NCBI GenBank assembly: GCA_001179505.1
Contig: CDMY01001040.1
Span: forward strand, 155,056 to 219,055
Length of the DNA stretch: 64,000 nucleotides
DNA from: Vitrella brassicaformis CCMP3155
Taxonomy: Eukaryota > Protista > Chromerida
Direction of reading: 5' to 3'
Shown: piece after piece, positions 2,411-53,910 of the stretch
Layout: each line of letters starts with the position of its first letter
How positions within the stretch are numbered: position 1 is the first letter of the stretch
Notes under the pieces: model-generated
Databases searched by the model: none
What the model was told of the DNA's origin: nothing
The model's input: only the letters and a program-made list of their open reading frames with translations
Position numbers and translations under genes: made by a program

Positions 2411-5400
2411 CTACGACAAAGGCACCTCCACCTGAAGCCACCCACCACCAACACACAACCACACACAGACAGACAGACAGGGATATGACGTACTGACGAC
2501 CCCATCAGCCTAGCTGGCCAGGCCGCCTGCTTCGTGTAAGTGTACCCCACCCACCCCGTCTCTTTTGGAGTCATTGATCCACTTGGAGAGGAGGTTCCTG
2601 AGGAGCAAGACAAGACACGACACGACGCGCGATGAGATATCTAGATTTGTGGAGGCTTGGCGAACAGACGAGATGCGTGCGTGCATCGAACGAGCTTACC
2701 GCAGTCCGAATTCCTCCATCCTGACACATTCGCACACACACACACACACACACGCAGAAAGAGATGCTTAGCTCCCTCCGTGTGAGTAGGTAGGTGCTGT
2801 GTGCGGGGCGTTACTTGAGCTCGGTGGAGAGTTGGCTCTGCTGGAGGCTGCTCAACGCATTGCCGTCCAGCCGTTGCTGCAGTAAGTGAGGCAGGCCATG
2901 CCAGGCAACACAAATGGTGATTGAAGTGTAAGAGGTGGGTGGGCTACGTGCGGTGCCTCGGTCGGGTCGGTTTGCGTACCGTATCGACATATTTGATGAG
3001 CTCGGCCGCCAGCGGCCTGGTGCGGCTCAGGTGGCTGAAGACAGCGCGGACCTCATCCACCGACAGCTCCTCAAGTCTCTTCTTGATAATGGTGCCAGGT
3101 GGACTGGCAGCTCCAGCACCACCTGCAGCACCACCTGCAGGTGAGGCAGCAGCCGAGGCAGGCTGCCCCTGTGTATCGTCCAACCCTGACAGCAGGCAGA
3201 GCAGAGCAGACACAGAACGTCATGACAAATCCATTCGCTGACTCGCCACGTCATCCCTCCCCTCCCACCTGTCTTGTGTTTCTTGTGCTTAAGATCACTG
3301 TCAGCACCGCCGTCCAGCCCCCGCTTCGCCCCTGCACCCCCACCACCAGCGACGCCGTTCCGTCTGTGACCGCTGGCTGCCGACCGTGCATCCGACTCGC
3401 TCGCGGCCATCTTCTCATCCACAGCTGCGCACACACACACACATTCGCATATACAGAGGAGCAACCGACACAGAGGGAGGTGATCGTCAGGCGGCTGCCA
3501 CCGAAACAGCTCCCTCCCTCTCCCTCTTTGTACCGATCTGTCTGTTGGTCTGTCTCGTCCGTCTGTAACGGCTCCCGTCGTAGCGCACAATCCTCTGGTC
3601 ACCGTCCACGATCATGGTGGCATCCGTCGAGCTGATGAGCTGACCGAACTCCTCCCTCTGCGCCTCCCGCAGCCTCTCCACAAGCCACTGCGACACCTCC
3701 CACTGGTGCTGGCCTCCTGACGGGTTGCGATGAAAGTCTCCCTCGATATAAATGTCGCTTCCGGGGCCGAAGGGGCCGATGCGCGCGACGACCGCCTCCT
3801 CGTGGCTGCTTGACGGGTTGTGCTCCAATCGCGCCTTGTCCTCGAGGCCGTCGTAGGCCGCGTCGTGCTCTGCAGATCGCGGATCGCACAGCCGATACCA
3901 TAGCTCCTGACATTGGGCAACTTGCTCTGAGATGGAGGTGCAGGGACGCTTGTGGTCGGTCTTGCCGCGCTTCGGTCGGGTCAGTCGGGAGGACGCTGTG
4001 GGTGGAGATGAGCGGGGAGCTCGACGGAGTGGCGAGGAGGGCAGCCCGCTGTTGAGGCCCTTGCGCTTGCCACCCTTGCCGGTCCCCTTGCCACCTCCCA
4101 ATCCCTCCTTGGCCCAACCCTTGCGCGCCTCGCGCGTCTCCTGGAGGACTTGAATGGCCCTGTCGCCCTCGAGCTTGACCTCGGTGACGGTATATTGGCT
4201 GGGGAGGGGCCCGACAGCTCCCCAGCTCTCTGCTCGCTTCATCGTTCGCTGGATCTTGAGCCGCAAGTTGTTGTTGTACCACTGCTCCTTGCCTCGGGAG
4301 GGATCCCGGTGGACGTCGGCCTGCACGTAGTAATCCCTGTTGGCACCGAAGTGGAACGGGCCGATGGTACATGTGACGGCCTCCTCGTGCTTGCTGGCCG
4401 AGGAGTTGTCCGCAAAGTACGCCTCCACACCAGCAAACAGGTCACCGGTAAAGATGCCGCCCTCCGACTTGGATCGCCACAGTTCTCGGACCTCCTCGAC
4501 GATCGCCTCCCTCTGTCGTCTCGGTGGTGGGGCTGTGTGGGGCGCTCCAGGCTGCTGGACGGGGGGCGATGCAGGCCGTCCCGCCTCGCTGGCAGCAGCT
4601 GCCGCACTGGCCGTTGGTCTCCCTCCAGCGTCGCCTGCGGCGTCACGCCGCTGGGCAGGGTCGCTCTTGGCCACCAGGATGCGCTTGCCGTCCATCCAGA
4701 CCTCGTTGAAGCCACCCGGAGAGCTCTGACCCGTCCGCGCCCTGTCGTGGGCCCGTTGGATCTTCTCCTTCAACTTGCTGAAGTACCATCTGGAGTTGCT
4801 CTGGCTCGGGTTGCGGTACACCTCGCCCCTGATGTGGTATGTGCCCAGGATGGGGTCGTTGAACGGGCCAACGATGACTGCACACACGCACAAACACACA
4901 CACACACGCTCAGACATCAGATACGGCGAACAGCGACACATCTGTCTGTCCATCTATCTTTTCCGTGTTGCGTCGGTCCATACGTACCAGTGACGGCCTC
5001 CTCGTGATGGCTGGTGGGATTGTGGACGCACTCGCACTCAAGGCCGATGAACATCTCCTCAGACGCCTTGCACTTCTTGTGGATGATGTCCCTGACCTCC
5101 TGCTCCATCTCATGAGGTTGGCGGCGCTGTCGAGGCTGCGATGACATGGCCAACTTGGCGTCGATGACGGGGAGCTTGTGCTTGCCATCCGCCGGGCGGC
5201 CCTTTTTGGTGCTGTTGTTGCTCCTCCTGCCGTGGGGGTTGTGGCTGAGCACTCGTCTGCCGCGCAACGTGACGAGGGAGTGCACGCCCGAGTTGAAGCC
5301 CGCGTGAATGCGCAGCCTGGTCCTGCGTGCGGCTGATTGCAGAGAGCCGAACTCCCACCACTGCTTCTTACGATCGGTCCGCTGGTACACCTCCGCCCGG

Positions 5401-8400
5401 ACATAGAATTCCTCCTCGTGCTCTCCATCGACCTTGCCACGGAACGGGCCGATCTCCACCACTACTGCCCTGGAATGCTTGCTCTTGGAGTTGTACGTGA
5501 AGTCTGCCTCCAGGCCGGCGAACAGCGCATCGTACAAGGCGCTCCCGTCAGTGGTCTTGGCCTGCCAGGCATCCTTGACCTCGGCCACCGCAGCGGCCAT
5601 TTCCTCCGGTGAAGGCTCATTTGGCCGGGGCGATGCGGCCTTGTCGTCCTCTTGTCTGTCGGCCATCTCGACATCGCGGTGCTCACCAGCCGCCCCCCCA
5701 TGGCCATCCTCACCATGACCAGCGGCCTTGTCAGGCGTGTATCGGTCCGGGCGAGCGGTGAGCCGTTTGCCTTTTGGCCGGTTGGCGATGGGCTCGTCAT
5801 CGCTGTCAGCCTGACCCCCGCCTATGTCGACGTCGAGGGGTGACTCGGAAGGGGGGCGGGGCGAATCACGGGATTGGGGTGGGGAGGCCGACTCGTCGGC
5901 GGCCATTGGACGATCAACGGGTTCAGTCGGCAGCTGTTTGGCATCACCACCAGCGGCAGCGGCAGCAGCAGCCACACTGCTCCCGGGCGTCTCCTTCGCG
6001 TGTTCAGCATCGTCATCGTCCGTCATGGCGTCTCCATTGTTGCCCTTGGGTGAAGCGTCAGGAGCTGGTGAGCCAGAGGGACCAGGCGAGGGATCTGCGT
6101 CGGCCTTGGGCTGCTGGCCGCTCTCCCCTGCGGACCCGTCACACCCCTCGGGCCTGACAAGAGCAGCCATGTGACCATGAGGGGCGGCGGGCCCCACATG
6201 AGAGGCACGATGGTTCTTCTCCTCGTCCTCGCTGGCGCCACCGTGCTCCCAGGCATCCAGAGCTCCCTGCAGGAGGTTATAGGTCTTGCCCGCCACATCA
6301 GGCCCGCCCGCCTCTGCCTCATCTCGGGCACCGTCGCCCTCACCCTCACCCACGCCAGGCCGCTGCCCGTCATGGCCCATCTCCCCTCGCATGGCCGTGT
6401 CGGCATCGTCACTCGCATTCTTCTGGACCGGCATCTGGTGTGCTGCCTCGGGCGGGTCGAGACTGTCGAATGGATCAACAGACGGGGACGACTCGTGACG
6501 GAGGGCGTCGACATGGCTATTGGGGGCCTTGCTGTCCGCCTCACTCTGAGGCAGGATGGGAGGGGGAGCCGGCACACGAGGAGGAATGTCGTCAGTGAAC
6601 GTCGTTCCATCATGCGCAGCACTAGGGGCCTCCAGCAGACGGCGAGATGACATGGGATGATCAGTTGGCTCCTTCGGCGGCTGCTCGCCATCTGGGTGCG
6701 TCTCGACAGCCACGCCGACGGAACGATCAGCCTCCAGTGACCCCCCAACGGCCACGGGCAACCTGCAGGCACCACACAGACAGAAGGAAGTTTTCCATAG
6801 GAAGTTTTCCAAAGAGATGGCCTAGGTGAGGTGCAGTGAGTGCGTCTGGCCACCCGCGGGCGCAGCGCACCTGGCCTCGTCGACACTACTGTTGGGCTTC
6901 TCTTCGGTGCACTCATTGTCCTTGCTGTCCGTCGGCATGGGACCTCCACTGTCGCCCTTGGCCGTCAGGCCATCCGCCACCTCAACAGCATCGGGCTGCT
7001 TGCTGCGCTCTCCTTCGGCAGAAGCACCCACGCTGTCGTGGGGGCCGGCTTGCGTAGCGGATGAACGATGCTGCGGCTGCGGCTGCTCTGCATCCATCGC
7101 ATCTCCATCCTCAGGGGGGCCATGGTCTTGGATGGCCGTGTCGGGCCCGACACACGCATCGGCGAGCACAGGCTTCTGATGCGCCGACATGGGTGGGGGC
7201 TGCTCGTTGTCTTGTGGACTGACTGACGGTGGGGGTCCGTGACTGGTAAGTGGGGCCATGGCGGTAGCTCCGGGTGCAACGTTGACAGCAGGAAGCCCCC
7301 TCGGCTGGGTGCCCGCATCTCTGACCTTGGCTTCCTGTTTCTGACACGGTGAATGAGCAGCACCCTCGTCCGCGGCCTCGTCCTGCCTCATCGTCTCGCG
7401 TTCCAGGTTGACCCGGGAGGGCCGTGCCGCTTTGAGGGTCGCAGGTGCCACGTGATGCGGGGGTTGCGGAGTCGGTCGAGCTTTGACCTTCTTGTCTCTG
7501 TGCTCTGCGTGTCTGTGGTCTTGGGGCTGCATGAGGATGTCACTGGCGTCCCAGCCCACACGTCTGTCACCTGCTGACAAAAGCCAGCAACGATAGATAC
7601 AACCAACTGACATGGATGTGTCAGGCCTGTACTCCCTGATGTGCGTTGGTGCATGCGTACCCACCCTGCTCTGATGGGCAAAGATCCGACACCGCCTGGT
7701 CGCCAGAGGCAGATTCACCACCGCCACCAGCCGCTGCCCCCTGGGTAGCTCTCTCAGCCGGTCGCTGCTGGCCGCGAGGACGAGGGGGGCTTATGACGGC
7801 CTGGACGCCCCCACCTCTGCCTCTGGCACTCCCCTCCATCAAGGCATCCTGCAGCTGGTCGATCGCCGGCCCCCGATCCCGACCCCGCCCGCCACGACCC
7901 TGCCGCTCGGCTGCATTGCCGTCGGGCTCGTCATCTGACAGCTCGATACAGACGGGCGGCTCCTTGTTGACGGAGGGGGCCGCCGCGGTGGTGGCGCCAG
8001 TCTGCTGGGCATTGCTCGTGAAGGGTGGCCTGTGCGCAGGCGGCGGACGGGGCGGGCCTCTGAGGCTCCTCATCGGAGGCCTCATTGGTAAGGGGGGTGG
8101 CGAGAATGGGGGCAGGCTGGGTGGTGAGAATGATGGCGCGTTGGGGGGCCTGTTGGTCGCAAGGTGAGAGGGCGGAGGGCGCATTGGCATCCTGAGATTC
8201 ATCGGGTCTATCGTCGGCGGTCTCAGACTGACAGTAAAGACACCTCTGCCGCCAGCCGAGAGAACGCTCTTGTTCGCCGTTGCAGGCCGCGAGATGGGAG
8301 GGCCTTGATTGCTGGCATGCTGTGGCTGCAATGGCAACGCTCTCCCAGCGAGGAGGCTTTCCTGCCGCGACGCCCCGGCCGCCCCCTGCCGCTGCTGCTG

Positions 8401-10021
8401 CTGCTGCTGCTGCCCATGTCGCGGGCGTGACTCCTGCGATTGCTGGGTGGGGGACTGAGGCATCGTAGAGAAGACACTGGGAGGGGGCTGCTTGCGGCTG
8501 TGATCCATGGCCGCCGCCGGTGTCGGTCTGGCTGCCTGTGCCGCCTGCCGCTGCTGTCCCGCCCCTGATGCTCCTGTTACAGTCTTCTGGGCAGCCGGCG
8601 CGGTCGCTGTCTGTGGAGTCGCCTGACGGGACGGCCCTCCCTCCTCGACCTTGACGCGCACGCCACCCGTCTTCTGCGTCGGTACCACACCGCCGTGTCC
8701 ACGTCCATTTTGACCCTTGTCGCTCCCGTCAGCCGGCTCCTCCTTGACGTCTCGACGCCAGACGGAGGGACAGTTGCGAGTCGGCCTCCCAGTGGACGTC
8801 AGGCTCCCAGAGGGGCAGCCGCTGTCCTGGGACGCTGGTCGATGGAGTGCGGGTCGGTCGGCCGCTCGCTGTGATGCACCTTCCTTGGACTGCCCTCTCT
8901 CCTGCGATTTGCCCATCGACACTCTCTTGTCATCCCGTTGAAGAGGTGGCCTCGCCTGCTGCTGCTGGTGGTGGTGGTGGTTGTGGTGGTGGGTGCCGGG
9001 GGCTGGTAGAGGGGGCAAGGCAAGCTGTGGCTGCACTTGTTTGTACTTGTGGATGAGGGTGCTGAAGTTCCAGCTGGAGTCGGGTGACGTGCCAAGGGGT
9101 GGGCGGGACACGGACGCTTTGATCGTGATCGGGGCGCCGCCATCCTTCGTGGCCAACGGTCCCAGCGTCACTGTGCAGCTGTCGCCGTCAGCTGCGGTCA
9201 CCCTGACCTGCCCGTCCGTGAGATGACAGATACACCTGAAGTCGGGGTCCTTTGAGCTGCACTTGGCCACCAGCTCATCCAGGCAGTCTCGCTCGAGGCT
9301 CGAGCTGGCTGGTGTCCATCCCGAGTAGCGCGCGGCTTGCGTGGGAGGCTTCTTGTGGCCTGAGTTGTGCTCCGTCTTGATGACTGCAGGTATGCCGACA
9401 GGACCAGGAGAGGCAGAGGCAGTGCGAGGGGGAAGATGGCGGGCGAAGGGCTTGTCATAAGGGGGGATGGGGTGAGGAATCGGACGGCCACGGACACTTC
9501 CAGCTGCCTGCACACGCCACGCAAACATGAATGATGACAACACAACAGCGTAGCGTATGAGGGGCTGTCGGTAAGGTAATATGGTGTGGTCCAGCTGCCT
9601 ACCTGAGGAGTCGCCTCGTTGGCCGGAGCGTGGACACCAGCCTTCCCCGCCGCCGGCAGGGCAGCACCGTGAGCGTTCGGTGGGCGGCAGCCGGTTGGCC
9701 GCATCCGTGCCGACGCTGCTGACGCCACAGGAGGCTGGTGAGAGCCTGGTGCAGCCATCACCGTGTGTGTGTGGCCCTTTGGGTGTGCGGCTGGTGGAGG
9801 GCTTGTGGCGCCAATGCCCAGCGAGGGCAAGTGGAGGTTAGGGACGTCTGGTTTGGCGTGGATGGCGGCTCCAGCATCCACAGTCCGACCGCTCCCTGAG
9901 CCATACACACAGACACAGAGCGAAAACAGAAGATCCACCACGGCTCAATGCCAACGGACCGAACAGTGTGAGTAGCACGTGCGCCGCGCCCACCTGTGGC
10001 ATGATGCCGCTGTGCGTCCAT
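2411..10021 (-). CDS. Large (~2,200 aa) multi-exon protein: disordered N-half, five copies of an unrecognised ~120-aa domain, C-terminal SAM domain (family member B)
   Basis: ORFs 9198-9941, 7621-9543, 6822-7727, 4917-6812 and 3487-4953 join through phase-compatible GT-AG introns (e.g. 4987-4878). Start is MDAQRHHAT at 10021. Terminal exons read KKRLEELSVDEVRAVFSHL..ELIKYVDT|QRLDGNALSSLQQSQLSTELK|MEEFGLR|NLLSKWINDSKRDG|VEVPLS*. Confidence 0.75.
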
Positions 10022-10570
10022 CCCTCGCGACGACTATCTGTGTGGCTGACGTCTCGCCCTGGGGAAAACAACACTACTATGTATGACCTTGTTTCATCAT
10101 CCCGCTGCCGTCACGACGGACTCACTCACAGATCCTTCCAGGAATCAGCAAATCCTCTGGCATCTCATATCCGCATCGTTCCACGGCGAGCCCTAAGCCC
10201 CGACAGCCAAAAACTGTTGACTCTCGTACGCTTGCAAAGTGGGTGTTTGCGGTGACCGAGTGAACGAGTAGTAGTGACTCGATTTGCACTGCGGGCCGCT
10301 CCGTCGTAGTCGACTCAGTGCGCTTGTTCTCTGCGCTCATTCGTTGTTTATCACTGTCGTTGAGTGATGCTGATGCACACAATAGTAAATCGCAGGTCAA
10401 ACATCCACGCAGATCGAAAAACAGTCACGTCGTGGACAGCAACGTCGTGACAAACACAGATGCACACACACACACACACACACACTCACGTGCACACGAG
10501 CAACGATGTGCATGCGCATGGCTTCATGGATGGATGGATGGATAAAGCACACGAACGACTGTCGATGCCG

Positions 10571-13560
10571 TCACGATTCGGCACCAGTGATGGCAGAGCC
10601 TGCCTCTGCTGAGGCCCCCGTATCCTCGGCCAATGCCGCAGCAACAGCAGCAGCGACATCCCCATTCCCATCCAACAGAACACCACCATCATCTGATCAG
10701 TCACACGCACCCACAAGGCGACACATACAGAGCCTGGACACCGGTAGAGTGAGTGGCCCACCTGTCTTCTGCACCTTGGTCGGTCGGCTCTCCCCCTCTC
10801 CCTCAGCCACGGGCGGCTCATGCGCCTTCCGCTTGCCCCGCGAGACCTCCTCAACCACCATCCCCCACCCATCGCCCACCAAGGGAGCCGCAGGTGGTCC
10901 TGACAGCCGACACAGACATACAACAGATGGACCCATGTAGCCATCTTTGCATGCCTTCCCGCCGACCGACCTGGTGGACGGTCGCCCTCTGGCTGGGCAG
11001 CTGTGGCCGCTAGCCAGTCGTCGAAATTCCGCCATACCGTGTCCTCGAATGTCACCGTCACCTCACTGGGCATCGCCGCCTCTCGTCGTGCAAGACGCAC
11101 AGCCCTGGCCAGCCGCTCGAAGCCGTCCCACCCATCCCGCACATCCCACCGCAGATCGACACAGACGCTGCAGTTGTTGGACATGCTGACCTCGACCTCC
11201 ACGCATCTCGACCCCTTGTCAGGCGTGCGGGTGAAAGTGGCCGCATCGACGAGGCCCTCGAAGTCGGGCTCGTACAACGGGCTCTCCTTGTCACACATCT
11301 CTCGGAAGACGCCAGTGCACCGCTCCAGTCTTGACACCATGTCTTGCTCATCTGTGCGCCGGTCAGGGGGAGGGTGCTGAGGTGCTGGTCCGTCGGTCAA
11401 GTCCATCATCTGTCGCTCGACGGCCGACCCATCCTCAACCGCCTCCAAATCCCGCTGCACCACCGAAGGGAAGGCTGCTGGTGGTTGTGTTGGTGGTGCG
11501 GATGAACTCGGCTCTGCTACTGACGCCTGCTGGGCATCGGTCTCTGCACCGACGAACCCAACACACACAAAACACATACAAAGGCAAATATGGGCGGAAT
11601 GAGTGGGCGTGGCCATCATGTCCATGATAGCCATCCAAATGGAAGCACCTCCCTACCTACCGTCTTTGGCCGGCGTACCGTCTTTGGCCGGCGGCTGTGT
11701 GTGGATGTCCCCCTGGCTGTTGCGGATGCACACCTCTGCACACACAAACAACACAAGAACACGTGTGGCCGAAAACATGAATGATGAATGCCATGACGCC
11801 CACGTGATGCCTTGTCTTACCGGGCGGCACCTGTTCCCCCGGCAGCCAGCCCTTCCCCCGACACTCGTCGCGAAAGGCAACTGCATGCACCAAGGCCTCC
11901 CTCAGCTCGTCAGGCTCTCCCTTGGTCGGGCGGAAGTAGCGCGACTTCCTCTCCACCTCACCGTTGTCCAGGGTCTTCTGGTAGCACATGATGAACACCT
12001 GACGCGTCTCGGAGTAAGTGACGTGGAAGCCCGGCACACGCTTGCCGTTGCACAACAGCCCCTCCCTCTGTCGCTGCTCGTTGATCATGCGGTTGGCCAG
12101 CATGCTGAGCATGGCCTTGTTGCCCCACTGGAGCGAAGGCAGCCGGTGTGACGTGAGAGAATCCCTCGCTGCGGCCGCCGCTGAGGGGGCCACCGCCAGA
12201 CGATCATCTGACGGTTGGTCAATCCCGTCAGCTCTCGCGCCCTGTCCATCGGCTGATGATGAAGGCACCTGCCCACCACGGCTGTCCTGGTGCTGGCTTC
12301 CTGCTCGCTCGCGTGTTGAGGCGGACGCATCAGCGGACGCCAGGGCCTCCATCTCTTCCAGCCCGACCCCTTCCTCATCGACGGGACTCACAGAGACCTC
12401 ACGGTCGGCTTGCCCCTCGGCGAACACGTCGTCTCTCGCGGCCAGGCCCGTCTGCTCTGCCGGTGGCTGCAAGCGCTTGCGTTTGCCGAAGTCGGGCGCC
12501 GCCGTGAGCTGCCTCCTGTATTTCAGAATGCGCTTGCCGTGCAGCTGAATGAAGGTGTAAAGGGATGGGTCGGGTGGGGCGCCGTTGCGCTGCCGTGCCG
12601 CTTTGATCTTGGCCCTGACGTTGCCGAGGGACCAGTAGGTCCTCCCCCGTGTCGGATCGCGATGCACCGGCGCATCGACCCAGTACTCGCCCCCGTGGCC
12701 ATCGGCGAACGGCCCGAGGACGCACGTGACGGCTTCCTCGTGTGTGGACGTAGGGTCGTGAATGACGGCGCTCAAGCCCGCCTGCGTTCTCAAGCTCGAG
12801 TCGTTGTAGAAGAGCACCTTCACCTCATGGATGAGGACAGCAGATGAGCGGGGACTTGTCGTGGGGCGGTGGCTTGGCGACAGCTCAGGACGTCCCTCTC
12901 CCTGACCCACCCTGTCGCCCTGCTCCACGGCCTCGCGAGCCATTCTTGCTCGCGCCGCAAGAACGGAACCCGTGGGGCTGCTGCCTCCTTGGGTCTCGAG
13001 AAGCTTGTCGAAGAGGTCGCCAAACTGCCACCCACTACTGCGTGTCGACGCCCGCCGACTCCCCGCCCGCCTGGCGACGCCTTTGACAGCCACGCACTGC
13101 CCGTCTGGGGTGTCGATAGGTCCCACTGTCACCTCGATCGTGCCGTCGGGATTGAGAGAGAAGTTGGTCTTGCTTTCGAGAGTGTCGAGGAACTGCCGGG
13201 CGTCGAACTCGCTCTGGTCGACTAGACTGGAGGCTGGCGTGCTCTTGCACTTGGCGACGAAGGCAGCGCGACACGTGCGGATGCACTCGTCCTCAGGATT
13301 GGTGTGCATTGGGTCGTCGCTGTCCCTGGCCTCGTGTCCATTGTCGTGTCGCCATGCTGCAGGACAGGCGTCTGTGTGCATGCCTGAGACACACGCAGAA
13401 AGGGTCAGTTTGCCAATGTGTGAGTGAGCCACCTCCTTTGTGCGTGCAATGCATCGTGTGGATGTGTACCCTTCGTGTGTGACTGCTGCGCCACTGGAGT
13501 TATCGGTGCAGGAGACAGTGGGCGAGCTTCCCTTGGGTGGGGCATATCTGGCAAAGGACG
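10571..13560 (-). CDS. AP2-domain protein with three copies of the same unrecognised domain (family member D); 5' end unresolved, may continue to 15173
   Basis: ORFs 11657-13636 and 10486-11634 plus small exons ending ..GSAITGAES* (stop 10571). AP2-like segment RVPGFHVTYSETRQVFIMCYQKTLDNGEVERKSRYFRPTKGEPDELREALVHAVAFRDE at ~11862-12040. Confidence 0.7.
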
Positions 13561-48235: not shown

Positions 48236-51200
48236 TTGGCGTCAGGCAGCCTAGGACATTCCGTGAAACTGCTCGTCGCCAAAAGGTTTGACGGACACGT
48301 CGTGGAATTCGGAGTGCAGATCATCTTTCGCCTTTGCCGAGCAGCAGGAGCAGCAGCAGACACAGCAAGGCGCATTGCGCCTGGAGAGATCCTCGGCGCA
48401 TCCCTCAGGCTACGGTGTCAGGAGCTCGGCAGCGGACGCCTCTCTGCGTCCACCAGCACGGCGGTCAGCGGGCACGAGCTGTCCTGTTACGACCAAAAAG
48501 GATGGCAACAGCTCGTCGTGACGAAGATAAAGGAGGCCACGAAAGACGCCACGCCCTTGCATCATGCAGCCAGTGAAGCCTCACGCTCACAGGCACGGCC
48601 AGTCCATCCAGCTCGGCATCCGGCGGCTGGCATCGGCTATGGGACAAGGAGAGGCCTCAGCAGAACAGTGACAGCACCGGCTCGCCAGTGGACCCTGGGG
48701 AGAAGGTGGCGTCGGCGGCACACGCTGCCTCTGCGGCAGGGCCAGATGGGACTGAAGGAGCGGGTAGTGGTGATGCCGCTGCTGTGATAGAGAATGGGGA
48801 ATCTGCGAACCACGGTGCAGGTGAGTTGAAGGGATGAAGCACCAATATACATATGACTTGTTACGCCCTTCGTATGTGTGTGTGCTTTGGTCAGGCGCTT
48901 GTGAGGCCCCGCCCACCTCTCCCAAGGTGTCGCCCGCTCCTGCTGGCGACATCCACAGTGACGCGCACATGAGTGCGCCAGCGAAGGATGACCGATTTGG
49001 GGACGGTGCCAGTCGGCCATGTGCGGACCAGCTTCCAGACGGCAGGACGGGCGCCGCAGCATCGGCAGATGTGGCTGCATCATCCTCGTCTGGTGATCGC
49101 CGTGTCGAGTGTGTCAAGAAACAGCCACCCTCCGTGCCCAGCCCGTCCATGCCGTCTTGTGGCGCCGCCTTGCCAGGGAGCGTCAGGCCGACGGGTGGAG
49201 GCGATGTGAAGCAGCAGATGCAACAGGATAGCGCAGAAGCGAAGCTTGGTAGGAAACAGAGCAAACCACGCAGGACACGGAAAGGGAGAGGGCGTTCACC
49301 ATTTGCTTAACTGGTTGTCTTTTGGTGCATCAGGCCTTGTTGATGTGGGTGGCCCTGCTAGCCAGCGATCGTGTCAGCCACCCCCTACCTCTCTCGGCCC
49401 ATGTGAGGTCGCCTGTCCGCTGCAGAAGATGAGCTCGGCGCCGTCACCGCTGTTCCCGCCAGTCTATGGCGGTCCGCCACCACCACCCCTGCCGCCGCAT
49501 CGGCCCTTATTGGCTCCGCCTCCCCTCTATAGACCACGATTCGCATCACCCATGCACCCACCTATGATGCCACCGATCATGGCGGAGCAGCAGGACTTCC
49601 TCCCGGTGCACATGGCGCCACCATACCTGGGGCCTCCGATCAACCTCACGTTGACACATCCGACGGTGGGCAGTGTGGGGTGGGTGGACAGACGGATCCT
49701 CGTGAATGCATGATACGTTTGATGTTTGTCAATGTCAGGTGGAGGGAGTTGGGAGACGAGTGCAGCCTCCGATGGTCATGATGCCCGTGCCGATGCTGCC
49801 GCCGGGGGGTGTGGCGCCGCCGATTTTTGGCGGGGGAGGAGTGGGAATGAGAATGGCTGCAGGTGTGGGTGTGCGGGGAGGGGGTCAGCAGTCGCCAGGA
49901 GGGGACAGGATGCATGTGTATGTCGGTATCGGAGGCCCCCCGCATCCACCACCTGCAGGGCCACCCCCGGCACAGCCACCACCCCCACCATTCCCACCAC
50001 CCCCACCCTCTCCCCGTCCAATGGCCCCTCCCATGCAGGGGATCGATCGTCCGCTTGTATCACCACTTATGGCTCGCGTGCCAAGCGGCCAGGGCTGGGC
50101 AGCTGCCAACCAATACGAGGCTGCCCCCCACAGGCACGTGTACGATGCAGCTATACGGCGATCGCACGCGGCTGTCCACCCCGCTCCCTCTCCACTGGCG
50201 ACGGACGAGGCGGCGCCCCCAATGCCTCCAACCACTGCCGGTGAGAGACGCAGCCGCACGAGGGATCGGGATGGAAGTGGGTAAATGGCTCCTCTGTGCT
50301 CTCATTTCAGGCTTCAGCTTCCAGTCTCCCCCGATGCCGCACAAGTCGGACCACATGCGGCGCTTGCTGCCCCCTCCAAATGGGGAGGGACCGCCAGCTG
50401 CCCACATCGAGGCTGACAAGGCCCTCCTGCCGATCGCTCCGCTCGCCGATATGAACCGACCCTTGCAGCCGGCAAGGCATTCGGCCACCGACGAAGACGT
50501 CAGCATGGAACCACTCGCCAAGGGGGAGAAGGAAGAGAGCGAGGGTGCTATGGAGATAGAAGAGCGTCCCAGCTCTGTGCAGCAGAATGCCCCTCCTGGC
50601 GCTGCTTCGATGGATGGCGATGACATCCCACACTTCAGCGATTCTCCAATTCCGCAGCATGCAGCCCCGACTGTGTCCCTGGGTCAACAGAGTGCGGGTG
50701 GGCCAGCGGTGGTCGCCCACATCGAGGATGCGCTGGACGCTGATGAGGCGTCGAGGGACCACAACACGCTGCCTCTGACGGTCGACGGTCGGAGCTCGTC
50801 TTCCCCCCTCCGTGACGTGAAAGCCGCCTTCCGCGCCAAAGGAACCAAGGGCAGCAGCCAGTATGACCCCCTATACGACGGCCGCACTGTCTTTCTGGCT
50901 CCCAGCCCCTCCGGCACTCACGAGGATGCCGTCACTGCCATGGTCGGCCCCCTGACGTCAGGTCGGCAGGAGTTCTTCGTTCGAGGAAAGGTGCATCGCA
51001 TCCGGCGCAGCCCCTCTTACGACTTCAGCGACCTGACGGCCACGCTGGCCGAGGCGGGGCAGAAGACAGGCACCCTGCTGGATGACATTGTCGACGACGG
51101 CGGGCTGTCTGTGCTTGACGACAGTCGCCGTGACGGGCCGATGCGACCAACTGCGACGGGGGTCCTCAAAGGCTTGGTGCGGATTCGACTGGGCGCTGGA

Positions 51201-53910
51201 CGGCCAAATCGGAGGCGGCAAGGGGAAAAACGACGGGACCGTGCTGCCGGTCCGCTGCATGACCATTCCTTGCGGGCCTCTCCAGCTTCTGTGCCGCGCC
51301 AAGGTCAGCGACAGCGTGAGGCTGTGGATCTGGCGGGGGGCGACAGTCTGGTGGAGCGGGAGAGGACAGAGGGTGAGGAGAGAGGGCTTCCTTCATCGCT
51401 GACCTGTCGTCGTCCCTCGAGCCGCCGCTCGCCTGATGTCCTCGTTCGTGAGGTGGAGTCGCTGTTCGAGCAGATGAGCACGCCAGGCAGCGCTCGATAC
51501 GATGAGGTGTTCGCCGGCCTCGAGTGTCTTGTCTTCCCTGAACCTGACAGCCAGTATGAGGAGGCCGTGCGATGCGTCGTGGGGCCGTTCCCTGGTGGTG
51601 ACGCCGGCCCGTACTACGTGGATTCGGTCGAGTACCCACTCGCTGCCACCAGCTCAGACGGCGGCAGGAGGTGGAGCTTCATGAAAGGGAGTCTGACGAG
51701 AAAGATCAAGACGGCACGCGAACGGAGGGGCTCTCCCCCCGCCCCATCCCTCTGCACCTTCGTTCGGCTCCATGGCAAACAGGTCGTGCGGTACAAGTAC
51801 CAGCTCACGGCGGGACTCGCCTTCGACAGACGCAAGCGCCCACAGCCGCCGGCCGAGCAAGCGGCCAATCCCGCGAGAGAGAAGGTGCCAACCGGCAAGA
51901 GGAAGAGGCGGCCCGACCGTGCAGTCTCTGAAAGCCCCGTCAGGCAGGAGGGGCGCGGGTTGGAGGATGGGGAGGAGGATGGCCTGCCGGGCAGCACAGC
52001 GTGTCCGGCGCGACTGCCGCAAGTGACAGGAGCAGACGGGGATGGCCGAGAGGTGGAGCATCGGTCGCCCGACGTCTTGGTTCGTGAGGTTGAGGCCATC
52101 TTCAGCCGCATGTCCACCGACAGCACTCATCGCCACTACTCGCTCTTCAACGGCCTGAGTGGCTCCTTCAGCGTCAACCCCCACAGCTCACATGAGGAGG
52201 CCGTCACGTGTGGTGGGTCCTTTCGCTGACGGGCAGGGAGGGGAGTACCACGTCGAGGCGGACGTGACGCGTGACCCTAATCGGGTCTTGTCCGATGGCT
52301 TCACAAGGTCGCGATGGGATTACAGCTGCCCCAAGGCGGTGGTCAAGCGCACGCGGGAGAGGGGCGGCCGGCCTCCCCAGACGACAGCTTTCAGCTTCGT
52401 TGAGAACGATGGCAAGAGGGTTCTCAAGGACGCACGCATGATTCCCAAGACCAAGAGCGCCACGACGACGTCCCAGCCCCACAGAGAGCAGCCCAACAGA
52501 GCAGCGAGACGGCCGCCCAGTGTGCTCGACCATGACCTTCAGCACGCCGCACAGCATCCTCGGCATGGCGCCCCTCTGCCCACCGCATCATTGGCCAAGT
52601 CAAGGCCGCCAAAGCGCGTCAAGGCCGATGGACCGTCCGTCACGACCAGCCCAGCACAGCAAGTGGCAGAGTGTGAGGCCTTGTGGGCCCAGCTGTGTGA
52701 CCCGTCATCTGCCGAGCACGATGAGGCCTACAGCGACCTCGACAACAAAGCGTCGTTCCAGCCTAACCCAAAGAGCCGCGTCACCGCGCGCATCGACCCT
52801 TTCGATGCGCCAGACGGCGCCATCTACATAGAGGGCGACTTTCGTCGCAACCCGTCACAAGGTCAGCATCGCTGAGGTGTCGCAGTGGCTCGTCGGGAGG
52901 CTGCGGGAGGCGCAGAGGGGGGACTTCGGTCAGCTCATCAACTCGACAGATGCCACCATGATCATCGATAGCGATCCCGCCAGCCAGTCCGGCCTCAAGC
53001 GCATCTACCGTCACACTGCCGGGTGGCGTGGCTCTGCGGAACGCCCGCACGTCCCTCCACCGAAGAAGAGGCGGAAGGGAAGCTCGGGGAGGGCCGCACA
53101 GAGGCTACCGCCACTGAGAGAGCCGAATGCCTCGCCAGGTGCTGCTGAGATGAAGGAACCGTCGCGCGGCGAGGCTGCCTCAGCGCCCAACGCCGACGGC
53201 AAGCACCGCCCCGCCGCAGACGACGACGATCCGATGGGCGACCCTGACAATGATAAAGAGGGCGACGAGCGAATCGCCAGCGGCCATTCGGGTGAGGGAT
53301 CTGGCTGGGAGGACCGTCGGCCGCTGGCGACGTGGGCGAAAAAGGGCGTGGTACGTGTCGGCTCTGCTGGCGTCGGGGATGGGATGGATGTGGAGGACAC
53401 GGGCGTGCCTGCCAGCAAGAGGACAGCCACAATGAAGCCACTCGAGACCCTGGAGACATCGGAGCTTGCCAGGGTCCTCGGCAGCCATCCCTGCCCTGTT
53501 CTGAGCAAGCTGATGCCACCGATCATAGTGGAGGTGGGGGCGAGGGCGAGGACACAGACGGCACACTGATGATCGGTGGACGAGTGATATGGGTACATGT
53601 ATCGTGTCTTGTCTTGTGTTGTGCACGAGGGGATCGAGGGTTCGTCTTTGCCTGACCTGACTTTGACTGACATGGCCGACATGGGGATGGCTGATGAGGA
53701 GCAGCGCTGCAGGCTGCTGGCGTGGATCGACAGCGTCAAGGGGACAGTGGTACGCGTCAATCAAAACAAAACACGGGGGCGAAATGGCTGACATGTGGCG
53801 GCTGATGGTCCTGTGGTCCCATGTGTGTGTGTGTGTTGTGTTGTGTTGTGTGGTGTGGTGTGCAGGTGGAGGTGCCTGAGGTGCACCCATCGGGCAGTCG
53901 TCCCACATAG
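48236..53910 (+). pseudogene. Family member C: four copies of the unrecognised domain plus terminal SAM/VEVP, with frameshifts and a damaged acceptor; 5' end unresolved
   Basis: ORFs 49863-52229, 52159-52875 and 52877-53569 are colinear with members B and D. Frame breaks at ~52210 and ~52874. SAM exon EGIEGSSLPDLTLTDMADMG..RLLAWIDSVKGTV|VEVPEVHPSGSRPT*. Sequencing error is not excluded. Confidence 0.6.

What the first reader, a model, noticed from the sequence alone, without database searches (positions are those of the whole stretch)
3580..13290. Unrecognised ~120-aa domain repeated ~12 times across three paralogous genes
The same module recurs five times in gene B (~3580-3935, 4140-4505, 4670-5113 split by an intron, 5250-5610, 9030-9295). 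It recurs three times in gene D (~11025-11345, 12515-12840, 12995-13290) and four times in gene C (~50810-51060, 51435-51800, 52075-52435, 52655-52995). The 9030 and 11025 copies are divergent. Consensus read from the translations: helix (EV..LW/F) - YD..F.GLE - NP.S.HEEAVT..(I/V/L)GPF - (Y/F).V.(A/G).V.R(D/N)P - W.F..L..KI..A..R - (L/N)(D/H)GKR(I/V)L. I cannot assign it to a known family. Copies sit as beads in long disordered linkers with NLS-like patches (GKRKRL, KKRRKG, KHKKHK) and co-occur with AP2 or SAM domains. Inference: a lineage-specific nuclear, possibly nucleic-acid-binding, domain family. The predicted three-strand-then-helix core echoes AP2/MBD/integrase DNA-binding topology, but this is only a pattern-level guess.
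Basis: partly seen in the sequence, partly recalled or inferred. Interest (0 to 1): 0.88.

Follow-up and report, generated by a model that had tools for sequence, protein, structure and literature searches.

The report
Orphan repeated domain in Vitrella regulators
Three neighbouring genes of the alga Vitrella brassicaformis, a free-living relative of malaria parasites, carry twelve copies of a compact ~125-residue protein domain that matches no known family or solved fold. It sits beside an AP2 DNA-binding domain or a SAM polymerisation domain, so it is probably a species-restricted building block of gene-regulatory proteins whose ligand is still unknown.

Summary

The genome is Vitrella brassicaformis CCMP3155. 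Gene B is CEM39532.1 (5 copies plus a C-terminal SAM). Gene D is CEM39533.1 (3 copies plus AP2). Gene C has 4 copies but two frame breaks.

A full HMM scan of 1.84 billion representative proteins found 10 true members: 9 from Vitrella and one metagenome ORF. Pfam and PDB sequence searches are blank.

The AP2 and SAM partners are supported by Atlas feature and structure matches, not by Pfam. No test supports kinship with AP2, and net charge ranges from -9 to +8.

Best reading: a lineage-restricted, non-catalytic binding module in nuclear regulatory scaffolds, ligand undetermined. It is a new domain family, but confined to one alga and functionally untested.

The parts
2552..10021 (-). Gene B = Vitrella brassicaformis CEM39532.1 (P0001, 2163 aa). 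At least 11 exons, with five domain copies and a C-terminal SAM domain.
   Evidence: Exact mapping of P0001 onto the window. Identity of the protein.
8920..9315 (-). Copy B0 (P0001 172-303), divergent
   Evidence: iE 4.8e-5 for 8968-9189 with an HMM that did not include it; 17.8 bits.
5217..5618 (-). Copy B1 (P0001 1337-1470)
   Evidence: iE 5e-34.
4642..5144 (-). Copy B2 (P0001 1495-1625), split by the GT..AG intron 4878-4987. This is the copy that was modelled.
   Evidence: AlphaFold2 model pLDDT 90.1.
4123..4539 (-). Copy B3 (P0001 1660-1798)
   Evidence: iE 1.8e-35. First model pLDDT 77.
3553..3954 (-). Copy B4 (P0001 1855-1988), sister of gene C copy 4
   Evidence: iE 2.6e-37. Tree support 100/99.
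2552..3183 (-). SAM-type C-terminal domain of gene B, spread over four small exons and ending in DGVEVPLS
   Evidence: It aligns with the C-termini of P0003, P0008, P0009 and P0012. The P0003 counterpart matches SAM clusters of Scm, Ph and L3MBT type at TM 0.69-0.73. Pfam does not detect it.
10574..13545 (-). Gene D = CEM39533.1 (P0002, 848 aa). Six exons, with three domain copies and one AP2 domain.
12911..13327 (-). Copy D1 (P0002 45-183), divergent
   Evidence: iE 1.2e-6; 24.4 bits.
12494..12868 (-). Copy D2 (P0002 198-322), followed by the basic patch GKRKRL
   Evidence: iE 3.5e-33.
11840..12058 (-). AP2-type domain of gene D (P0002 468-540)
   Evidence: Atlas: 68 of 100 feature hits are AP2 clusters, and structure TM is 0.61 and 0.57 to AP2 clusters. 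Not detected by Pfam or by PDB sequence search.
11002..11367 (-). Copy D3 (P0002 631-752), divergent and acidic (net -9); sister of P0003 copy 1
   Evidence: iE 1.8e-5. Tree support 97/96. Charge.
50790..51107 (+). Gene C copy 1
   Evidence: iE 1.9e-14.
51414..51824 (+). Gene C copy 2, sister of D2
   Evidence: iE 5.5e-23. Tree support 97/95.
52062..52434 (+). Gene C copy 3, with a frame break at about 52208-52212, just after HEEAVT
   Evidence: The two halves lie in different frames, iE 9e-6 and 1.6e-14. Sequence. The same sequence appears in four runs with no joints.
52642..52990 (+). Gene C copy 4, with a frame break at about 52868-52876 where the conserved Trp should be; the HEEAV stretch is missing
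   Evidence: 74% DNA identity to B4.

Best explanation
The module is a genuine, independently folding, non-catalytic domain of about 125 residues: helix, four-strand antiparallel meander, helix, then a beta-hairpin. As far as sequence searches can see, it exists only in Vitrella brassicaformis and one unassigned metagenome contig.

One to five copies are strung on long low-complexity linkers. The host proteins also carry an AP2-type DNA-binding domain and/or a C-terminal SAM domain of the polymerising Polycomb (Scm/Ph/L3MBT) type.

The most likely role is a ligand-binding bead in nuclear gene-regulatory scaffolds. In this reading AP2 supplies DNA targeting and SAM supplies self-association. 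The array of new domains supplies multivalent binding to a still unknown partner: nucleic acid or a chromatin or transcription protein, roughly equal odds.

Shown here: the domain, its fold prediction, its restriction, its partner domains, and its long divergence with modest constraint (dN/dS below 1). Inferred only: nuclear location, binding function and the ligand.
For: **Repeat is real.** All 12 copies are significant.

**Compact fold.** Confident for two different copies: pLDDT 77 and pTM 0.68 with 12 sequences, and pLDDT 90.1 and pTM 0.81 with 23 sequences. The order of secondary-structure elements is the same in both.

**Restriction.** The exhaustive profile search of 1.84e9 representatives gave 12 hits. 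Two are repeat artefacts, nine are Vitrella proteins and one is an ENA metagenome ORF.

**No enzyme-like motif.** The only near-invariant residues are the Pro of GP[FYL] and one Trp. HEEAV is absent from about half of the copies.

**Partner domains.**
- AP2 in P0002.
- SAM in P0003, aligned with P0001, P0008, P0009 and P0012.
- In total 5 of 9 Vitrella members end in the SAM-like domain, and 3 carry AP2-like segments (by eye for P0009 and P0012).

**Constraint.** dN/dS is 0.25-0.58 between paralogous copies, although dS is near saturation. Copies sit on long branches of about 1 change per site yet keep the fold-defining residues. Position-specific sister pairs across genes are B4/C4, D2/C2 and D3/P0003-1.

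**Conserved basic positions.** R74, K91, R96, R98 and R118.

**Background.** Woo et al. 2015 (PMC4501334) report a large paralogous expansion of apiAP2 genes in Vitrella.
Against: - No experiment and no homologue of known function bears on the role.
- Net charge of the copies ranges from -9 to +8, with pI 4.5-10.2. That is not what a uniform nucleic-acid binder would show.
- Pfam sees neither the AP2 nor the SAM partner. Those calls rest on language-model features and on TM scores of predicted models of short stretches.
- Four members (P0004, P0005, P0006, P0013) have no partner domain.
- One of the three window genes (C) is broken.
- The family could be evolving fast without a conserved molecular role.
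Confidence: 0.55

Rival explanations
1. It is a strongly derived AP2-type (or other beta-sheet-plus-helix) DNA-binding domain with an added N-terminal helix and C-terminal hairpin. The arrays would then be multi-DBD transcription factors.
For: - Strands 2-4 plus helix 2 have the strand-strand-strand-helix order of AP2.
- From memory of the plant ERF consensus (a lead, not a test), the stretch 'A-E-V-x-R-D-P ... W ... helix' and the 'G-P-F...G' turn resemble 'AEIRDP...RVWLGTF...helix' and 'RPWG'.
- The family sits in AP2-rich proteins of a genome known for AP2 expansion.
- Basic positions are conserved in helix 2 and at the strand ends.
Against: - The Pfam AP2 model hits none of the 23 copies at E up to 10.
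- hhalign against eight Vitrella AP2-like segments gives probability 0.08%. That reference alignment is small and hand-picked.
- No AP2, MBD or integrase-arm structure appears in the rows shown by Foldseek or VIA-align against PDB, or by the Atlas shape search.
- Several copies are strongly acidic.
Confidence: 0.15
2. It is a protein- or peptide-binding module, and the arrays are adaptor scaffolds. The analogy is the SUFU N-terminal domain, which clamps a transcription-factor peptide, or the MBT reader arrays that precede SAM in Polycomb proteins.
For: - The layout 'array plus C-terminal SAM' parallels Scm, L3MBT and Sfmbt, and the SAM matches exactly those clusters.
- The variable charge of the copies fits varied protein ligands.
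Confidence: 0.25
3. It is a fast-evolving, possibly dispensable or selfish paralogue family with no conserved molecular function. The copies would partly be decaying remnants of recent segmental duplications.
For: - The family is confined to one species as far as sequence shows.
- Members are clustered in two genomic neighbourhoods.
- Gene C has two frame breaks and an internal deletion.
- P0004 contains an exact internal duplication.
Against: - Copies are old (about 1 change per site) yet keep the same core residues and a confidently predicted fold.
- dN/dS is 0.25-0.58.
- Gene models B and D are intact over 2163 and 848 codons and keep their partner domains.
Confidence: 0.1

Closest known systems
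AP2/ERF (ApiAP2) DNA-binding domain, Pfam PF00847
   Same: It has a three-strand antiparallel sheet followed by a helix. It is found in the same proteins and the same expanded gene families of chromerids. By recollection, it shares a local 'RDP ... W ... helix' motif.
   Different: The new domain is twice as long: it adds an N-terminal helix, a first strand and a C-terminal hairpin. The Pfam AP2 model gives no hit, the profile-profile comparison gives no signal, and no AP2 structure appears among the listed fold matches.
SUFU N-terminal domain and bacterial SUFU-like proteins (PDB 3k5j, 4km9); DUF4262 (PF14081)
   Same: These are the only known folds that align over the whole domain, 104-114 residues. 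They are alpha+beta, with the sheet packed against helices, and SUFU binds a transcription-factor peptide.
dsRBD, SRP9/14 and ribosome hibernation factor (HPF/RaiA) alpha-beta-beta-beta-alpha folds
   Same: The core is helix, antiparallel sheet, helix, with both helices on one face. Weak hits of this kind recur in every PDB search.
Polycomb-group 'reader array + SAM' proteins (Scm, L3MBTL, Sfmbt)
   Same: Several copies of a small binding domain precede a C-terminal SAM domain. The SAM of this family matches those clusters best (TM about 0.7).
   Different: The repeated domain is not MBT (no Pfam hit). The likeness is one of architecture, not descent.
ACDC (AP2-coincident domain, PF14733) of apicomplexan ApiAP2 proteins
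   Same: It is a lineage-restricted domain of unknown function that accompanies AP2 domains in the relatives of this alga.
   Different: No Pfam match to ACDC for any copy or whole protein. It is also repeated up to five times rather than single and C-terminal.

Membership tests
AP2/ERF domain (PF00847) | Match to the family profile | tested here: not met
   None of the 23 copies hits PF00847 at E up to 10. The whole proteins do not hit it at E up to 1.
AP2/ERF domain (PF00847) | Profile-profile similarity to AP2 domains | tested here: inconclusive
   hhalign of A3 against eight Vitrella AP2-like segments (A4) gives probability 0.08%. A4 is small, hand-picked and itself undetected by Pfam. A comparison with the curated AP2 profile could not be run.
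AP2/ERF domain (PF00847) | About 60-residue three-strand sheet plus one helix, structurally superposable on solved AP2 domains | tested here: not met
   The same order of elements exists inside the model. But no AP2 entry appears in the rows shown by Foldseek, VIA-align or the Atlas search. A direct pairwise superposition was not possible.
SUFU-like fold (PF05076 / DUF4262) | Significant structural or sequence match | tested here: not met
dsRBD / HPF-type RNA-binding folds | Significant structural match over the domain | tested here: not met
ACDC (PF14733) | Match to the family profile | tested here: not met
   No hit.
SAM domain (partner domain, PF00536/PF07647) | Five-helix SAM fold at the C-terminus | tested here: met
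   The Atlas model of P0003 676-760 aligns to SAM clusters at TM 0.69-0.73, and 64 of 100 feature hits are SAM. The Pfam profile itself is not matched, so the call is by fold only.
New family (this domain) | Profile match with G-P-[FYL] turn, Arg at the end of strand 3, invariant Trp in strand 4, basic helix 2 and G-x-R-[IV]-L hairpin | tested here: met
   All 12 window copies and about 13 further copies in eight more proteins (seven other Vitrella proteins and P0010) match.

The most novel reading that the evidence does not exclude
This would be a protein fold and domain family born, or diverged beyond recognition, within the vitrellid lineage. It would act as a new class of nucleic-acid- or chromatin-binding module and would have been recruited alongside ApiAP2 and Polycomb-type SAM domains to build a private layer of gene regulation in a close free-living relative of Apicomplexa.
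Probability: 0.3. Interest if true: 0.7.

Novelty: categorically new. Interest (0 to 1): 0.52.

Why it matters
Chromerids are the reference point for how apicomplexan parasites acquired their ApiAP2-based gene regulation. Here, part of the Vitrella regulator expansion is built around a domain that no database recognises, and its confidently predicted fold has no neighbour among solved or predicted structures.

If it binds DNA, RNA or chromatin, it would be a new binding fold. It would also be an example of lineage-specific invention of regulatory parts.

The reach is limited. The family is seen in one non-model alga, orphan domains are common in protists, and nothing about its function has been tested.

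Tried and rejected
**Sequence searches of the domain, all blank**
- Pfam on ORFs, whole proteins and all 23 single copies: nothing relevant.
- PDB sequence search with both profiles: only chance hits at E ≥ 0.2.
- Language-model Atlas search with one copy: best score 0.74, unnamed bacterial clusters, uninformative.

**Fold searches with two models, all below significance**
- Libraries searched: PDB by Foldseek, PDB by VIA-align (wide search and second look), AlphaFold DB clusters, ESM Atlas and BFVD.
- The only exception is two AlphaFold DB proteins of the A0A0G4 accession series.

**Other searches**
- Word-indexed homologue searches with gene D regions and with gene C returned only the query or nothing. 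The annotation status of gene C and the species of A0A0G4FRN4 and A0A0G4FW33 therefore stay unknown.
- PDB sequence searches for the AP2 and SAM partners were blank.
- A literature search found no description of this domain.

**Readings rejected**
- Enzyme: there are no invariant polar or catalytic residues.
- ACDC, MBD or MBT membership: no profile hit.
- Artefact of low complexity: the two repeat-protein hits P0007 and P0011 are false positives, but the family members are not.
- Introns in gene C copies 3 and 4: there is no room for them, and no joints appear in the reads.
Full report
**1. Observation**

The window is GC-rich (58-65% in the gene regions).

- A profile from five obvious copies found nine copies in the six-frame translation, at iE 1e-8 to 1e-49.
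- That profile scores the three at 17.8-24.4 bits. Their iE values are 1.2e-6, 1.8e-5 and 4.8e-5 against all 1287 six-frame segments of the window, and the first noise hit is at iE 1.4.

The count of twelve and the coordinates are therefore right, and no further copy lies in the window.

**2. Organism and gene models**

- The proteins are from Vitrella brassicaformis CCMP3155.
- Gene B is CEM39532.1 (2163 aa, exons from 10021 down to about 2552).
- Gene D is CEM39533.1 (848 aa, 13545 down to 10574).
- The copy at 4642-5144 is split by a canonical GT..AG intron at 4878-4987. Splicing restores HEEAVT|VIVGPF.
- Two runs of unknown type hold 0.93 of the sampled words of 3553-5618, while three others hold 1.00. 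A share of 0.93 is what loss of that 110-nt intron would give. This suggests spliced RNA, but I could not lay the reads.

Gene C (plus strand, 50.8-53.6 kb) is different. Copies 3 and 4 change frame at about 52208-52212 and 52868-52876 with no room for an intron, and copy 4 lacks the HEEAV stretch. Contigs of four runs show exactly this sequence with no joints, although some of those runs may be the source of the assembly. dN/dS of gene C copies against their closest relatives is 0.25-0.55. The gene therefore diverged under constraint and looks recently broken or pseudogenised.

**3. Family size and range**

A profile search that reads every one of 1.84 billion representative proteins returned 12 hits at E ≤ 1e-3.

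- Two are repeat-protein artefacts (P0007, P0011).
- Nine are Vitrella proteins.
- One is a 178-aa ORF on an 8.7-kb ENA metagenome contig of 58% GC.
- No Chromera, apicomplexan or dinoflagellate protein was found.

By structure, AlphaFold DB adds two proteins of the A0A0G4 accession series, A0A0G4FRN4 (named 'AP2/ERF domain-containing protein') and A0A0G4FW33. They match at TM 0.60-0.64 and probability 1.0, with only 15-18% identity. Their species is not shown by the tool. The family is thus somewhat larger than sequence profiles reveal.

Members lie in two genomic clusters (CEM39526, CEM39532 and CEM39533 on one contig; CEM29677, CEM29682 and CEM29684 on another) plus scattered genes.

**4. 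What the domain looks like**

- The 23-copy alignment has two near-invariant residues, the Pro of G-P-[FYL] and a Trp.
- Commonly conserved are F/L/G-L in the N-terminal part, A-V at the start of strand 2, Arg at the end of strand 3, K/R in helix 2, P-x-P after it, and G-x-R in the hairpin.
- HEEAV is a feature of only about half of the copies, so it is not a catalytic motif.
- AlphaFold2 with 12 sequences gave pLDDT 77 and pTM 0.68 for copy B3.
- With 23 sequences it gave pLDDT 90.1 and pTM 0.81 for copy B2, with the same order of elements: H10-26, E36-41, E49-60, E64-75, E80-84, H86-101, E109-114, E117-122.

The refutation test 'no compact predicted fold' therefore fails, and the domain stands.

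**5. Comparison with known families**

*Sequence.* Pfam is blank for ORFs, whole proteins and each of the 23 copies at E up to 10. PDB sequences are blank.

*Structure, with the good model.*
- Foldseek against PDB: best E 0.098, TM at most 0.39.
- Second look at Foldseek's top 1000: the same.
- ESM Atlas: best TM 0.49, to DUF4262.
- BFVD: nothing.

Two weak themes recur. Helix-sheet-helix RNA-binding folds (dsRBD, SRP9/14, HPF/RaiA) cover about 80 residues. SUFU N-domain and DUF4262 are the only ones to span the whole domain. Neither theme is significant.

From memory of the ERF consensus, 'AEIRDP...RVWLGTF-helix' resembles 'AEVxRDP...W.F-helix'. No test supports it: hhalign against eight Vitrella AP2-like segments gives 0.08% probability, the Pfam AP2 model gives nothing, and no AP2 structure appears in the listed fold matches. 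The AP2 reference alignment was weak, so I rate distant kinship to AP2 as unlikely but open.

**6. Partner domains and context**

- The AP2 domain of gene D (P0002 468-540, window 11840-12058) escapes Pfam and PDB sequence searches.
- The Atlas supports it: 68 of 100 nearest feature clusters are AP2, and its model aligns to AP2 clusters at TM 0.61 and 0.57.
- The C-terminal region shared by P0001, P0003, P0008, P0009 and P0012 matches SAM clusters of Scm, polyhomeotic and L3MBT type at TM 0.69-0.73.
- P0009 and P0012 also carry AP2-like segments by eye.
- Basic patches (GKRKRL, KKRRKG, KHKKHK) are present.
- Woo et al. 2015 (PMC4501334) describe a large paralogous apiAP2 expansion in Vitrella, including one cluster of 50 homologous genes. 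They mention no such domain.
- Earlier notes of this scan report other AP2-chromatin fusions in this genome. I did not test them.

**7. Evolution**

A maximum-likelihood tree of 25 copies is mostly unresolved, with long branches of about 1 change per site. It gives three well-supported cross-gene sister pairs: B4/C4, D2/C2 and D3/P0003 copy 1. The arrays therefore formed long ago and whole genes or segments were duplicated afterwards. dN/dS of 0.25-0.58, with dS near saturation, indicates purifying selection.

**8. Mechanism**

There is no catalytic signature. The domain occurs as beads on disordered linkers next to a DNA-targeting domain and/or a polymerising domain. The best-supported reading is a binding module that gives multivalent attachment within nuclear regulatory assemblies.

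Five conserved basic positions argue for a nucleic-acid or acidic ligand. The wide charge range (-9 to +8, mean +1) argues against a uniform nucleic-acid binder and fits diverse protein ligands. I put nucleic-acid and protein or chromatin ligands at roughly equal odds. Everything beyond 'real, folded, lineage-restricted, associated with AP2 and SAM' is inference.

**9. Verdict**

It is a new domain family with no detectable relatives. It is of moderate interest because it is confined to one alga and functionally untested.

Noticed in passing
window 50790-53600 (+): Gene C, the third paralogue, has two frame breaks inside domain copies (about 52208-52212 and 52868-52876) and a deletion of the HEEAV stretch in copy 4. 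The sequence is identical in four public runs and shows no splice joints. It is probably a recently broken gene. I could not establish whether it is annotated.
   Followed up: partly
window 3553-5618: Runs X1 and X3 hold 0.93 of the sampled words, while X2, X4 and X5 hold 1.00. The deficit equals what removal of the 110-nt intron at 4878-4987 would cause. X1 and X3 are therefore probably RNA assemblies with the intron spliced out.
   Followed up: no
window 50800-53000: Six marine-sediment metagenome runs (2023-2025) hold 5-27% of the 31-letter words of gene C. Vitrella or a very close relative is thus present in those sediments.
   Followed up: no
L001:4965-5534 (ENA ERZ893784 contig k147_5863585): This is the only non-Vitrella-labelled family member (P0010): a single-domain ORF on a 58% GC metagenome contig, next to an RRM-domain gene. 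It may be Vitrella itself or a relative.
   Followed up: partly
P0004 (CEM29682.1), residues about 185-300: It carries an exact tandem duplication of about 55 residues of the domain. P0004, P0005 and P0013 form a second, near-identical gene cluster on another 300-kb contig, and their gene models look fragmentary.
   Followed up: no
window 2552-3183 (-), and the C-termini of P0003 and P0008: The SAM-type domains end in a shared short tail (DGVEVP / GWLKVP) encoded by tiny terminal exons.
   Followed up: partly
P0009 and P0012 (CEM30101.1, CEL99614.1): Each combines one copy of the new domain with several very divergent AP2-like segments and a SAM-like C-terminus. None of these is seen by Pfam.
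   Followed up: partly
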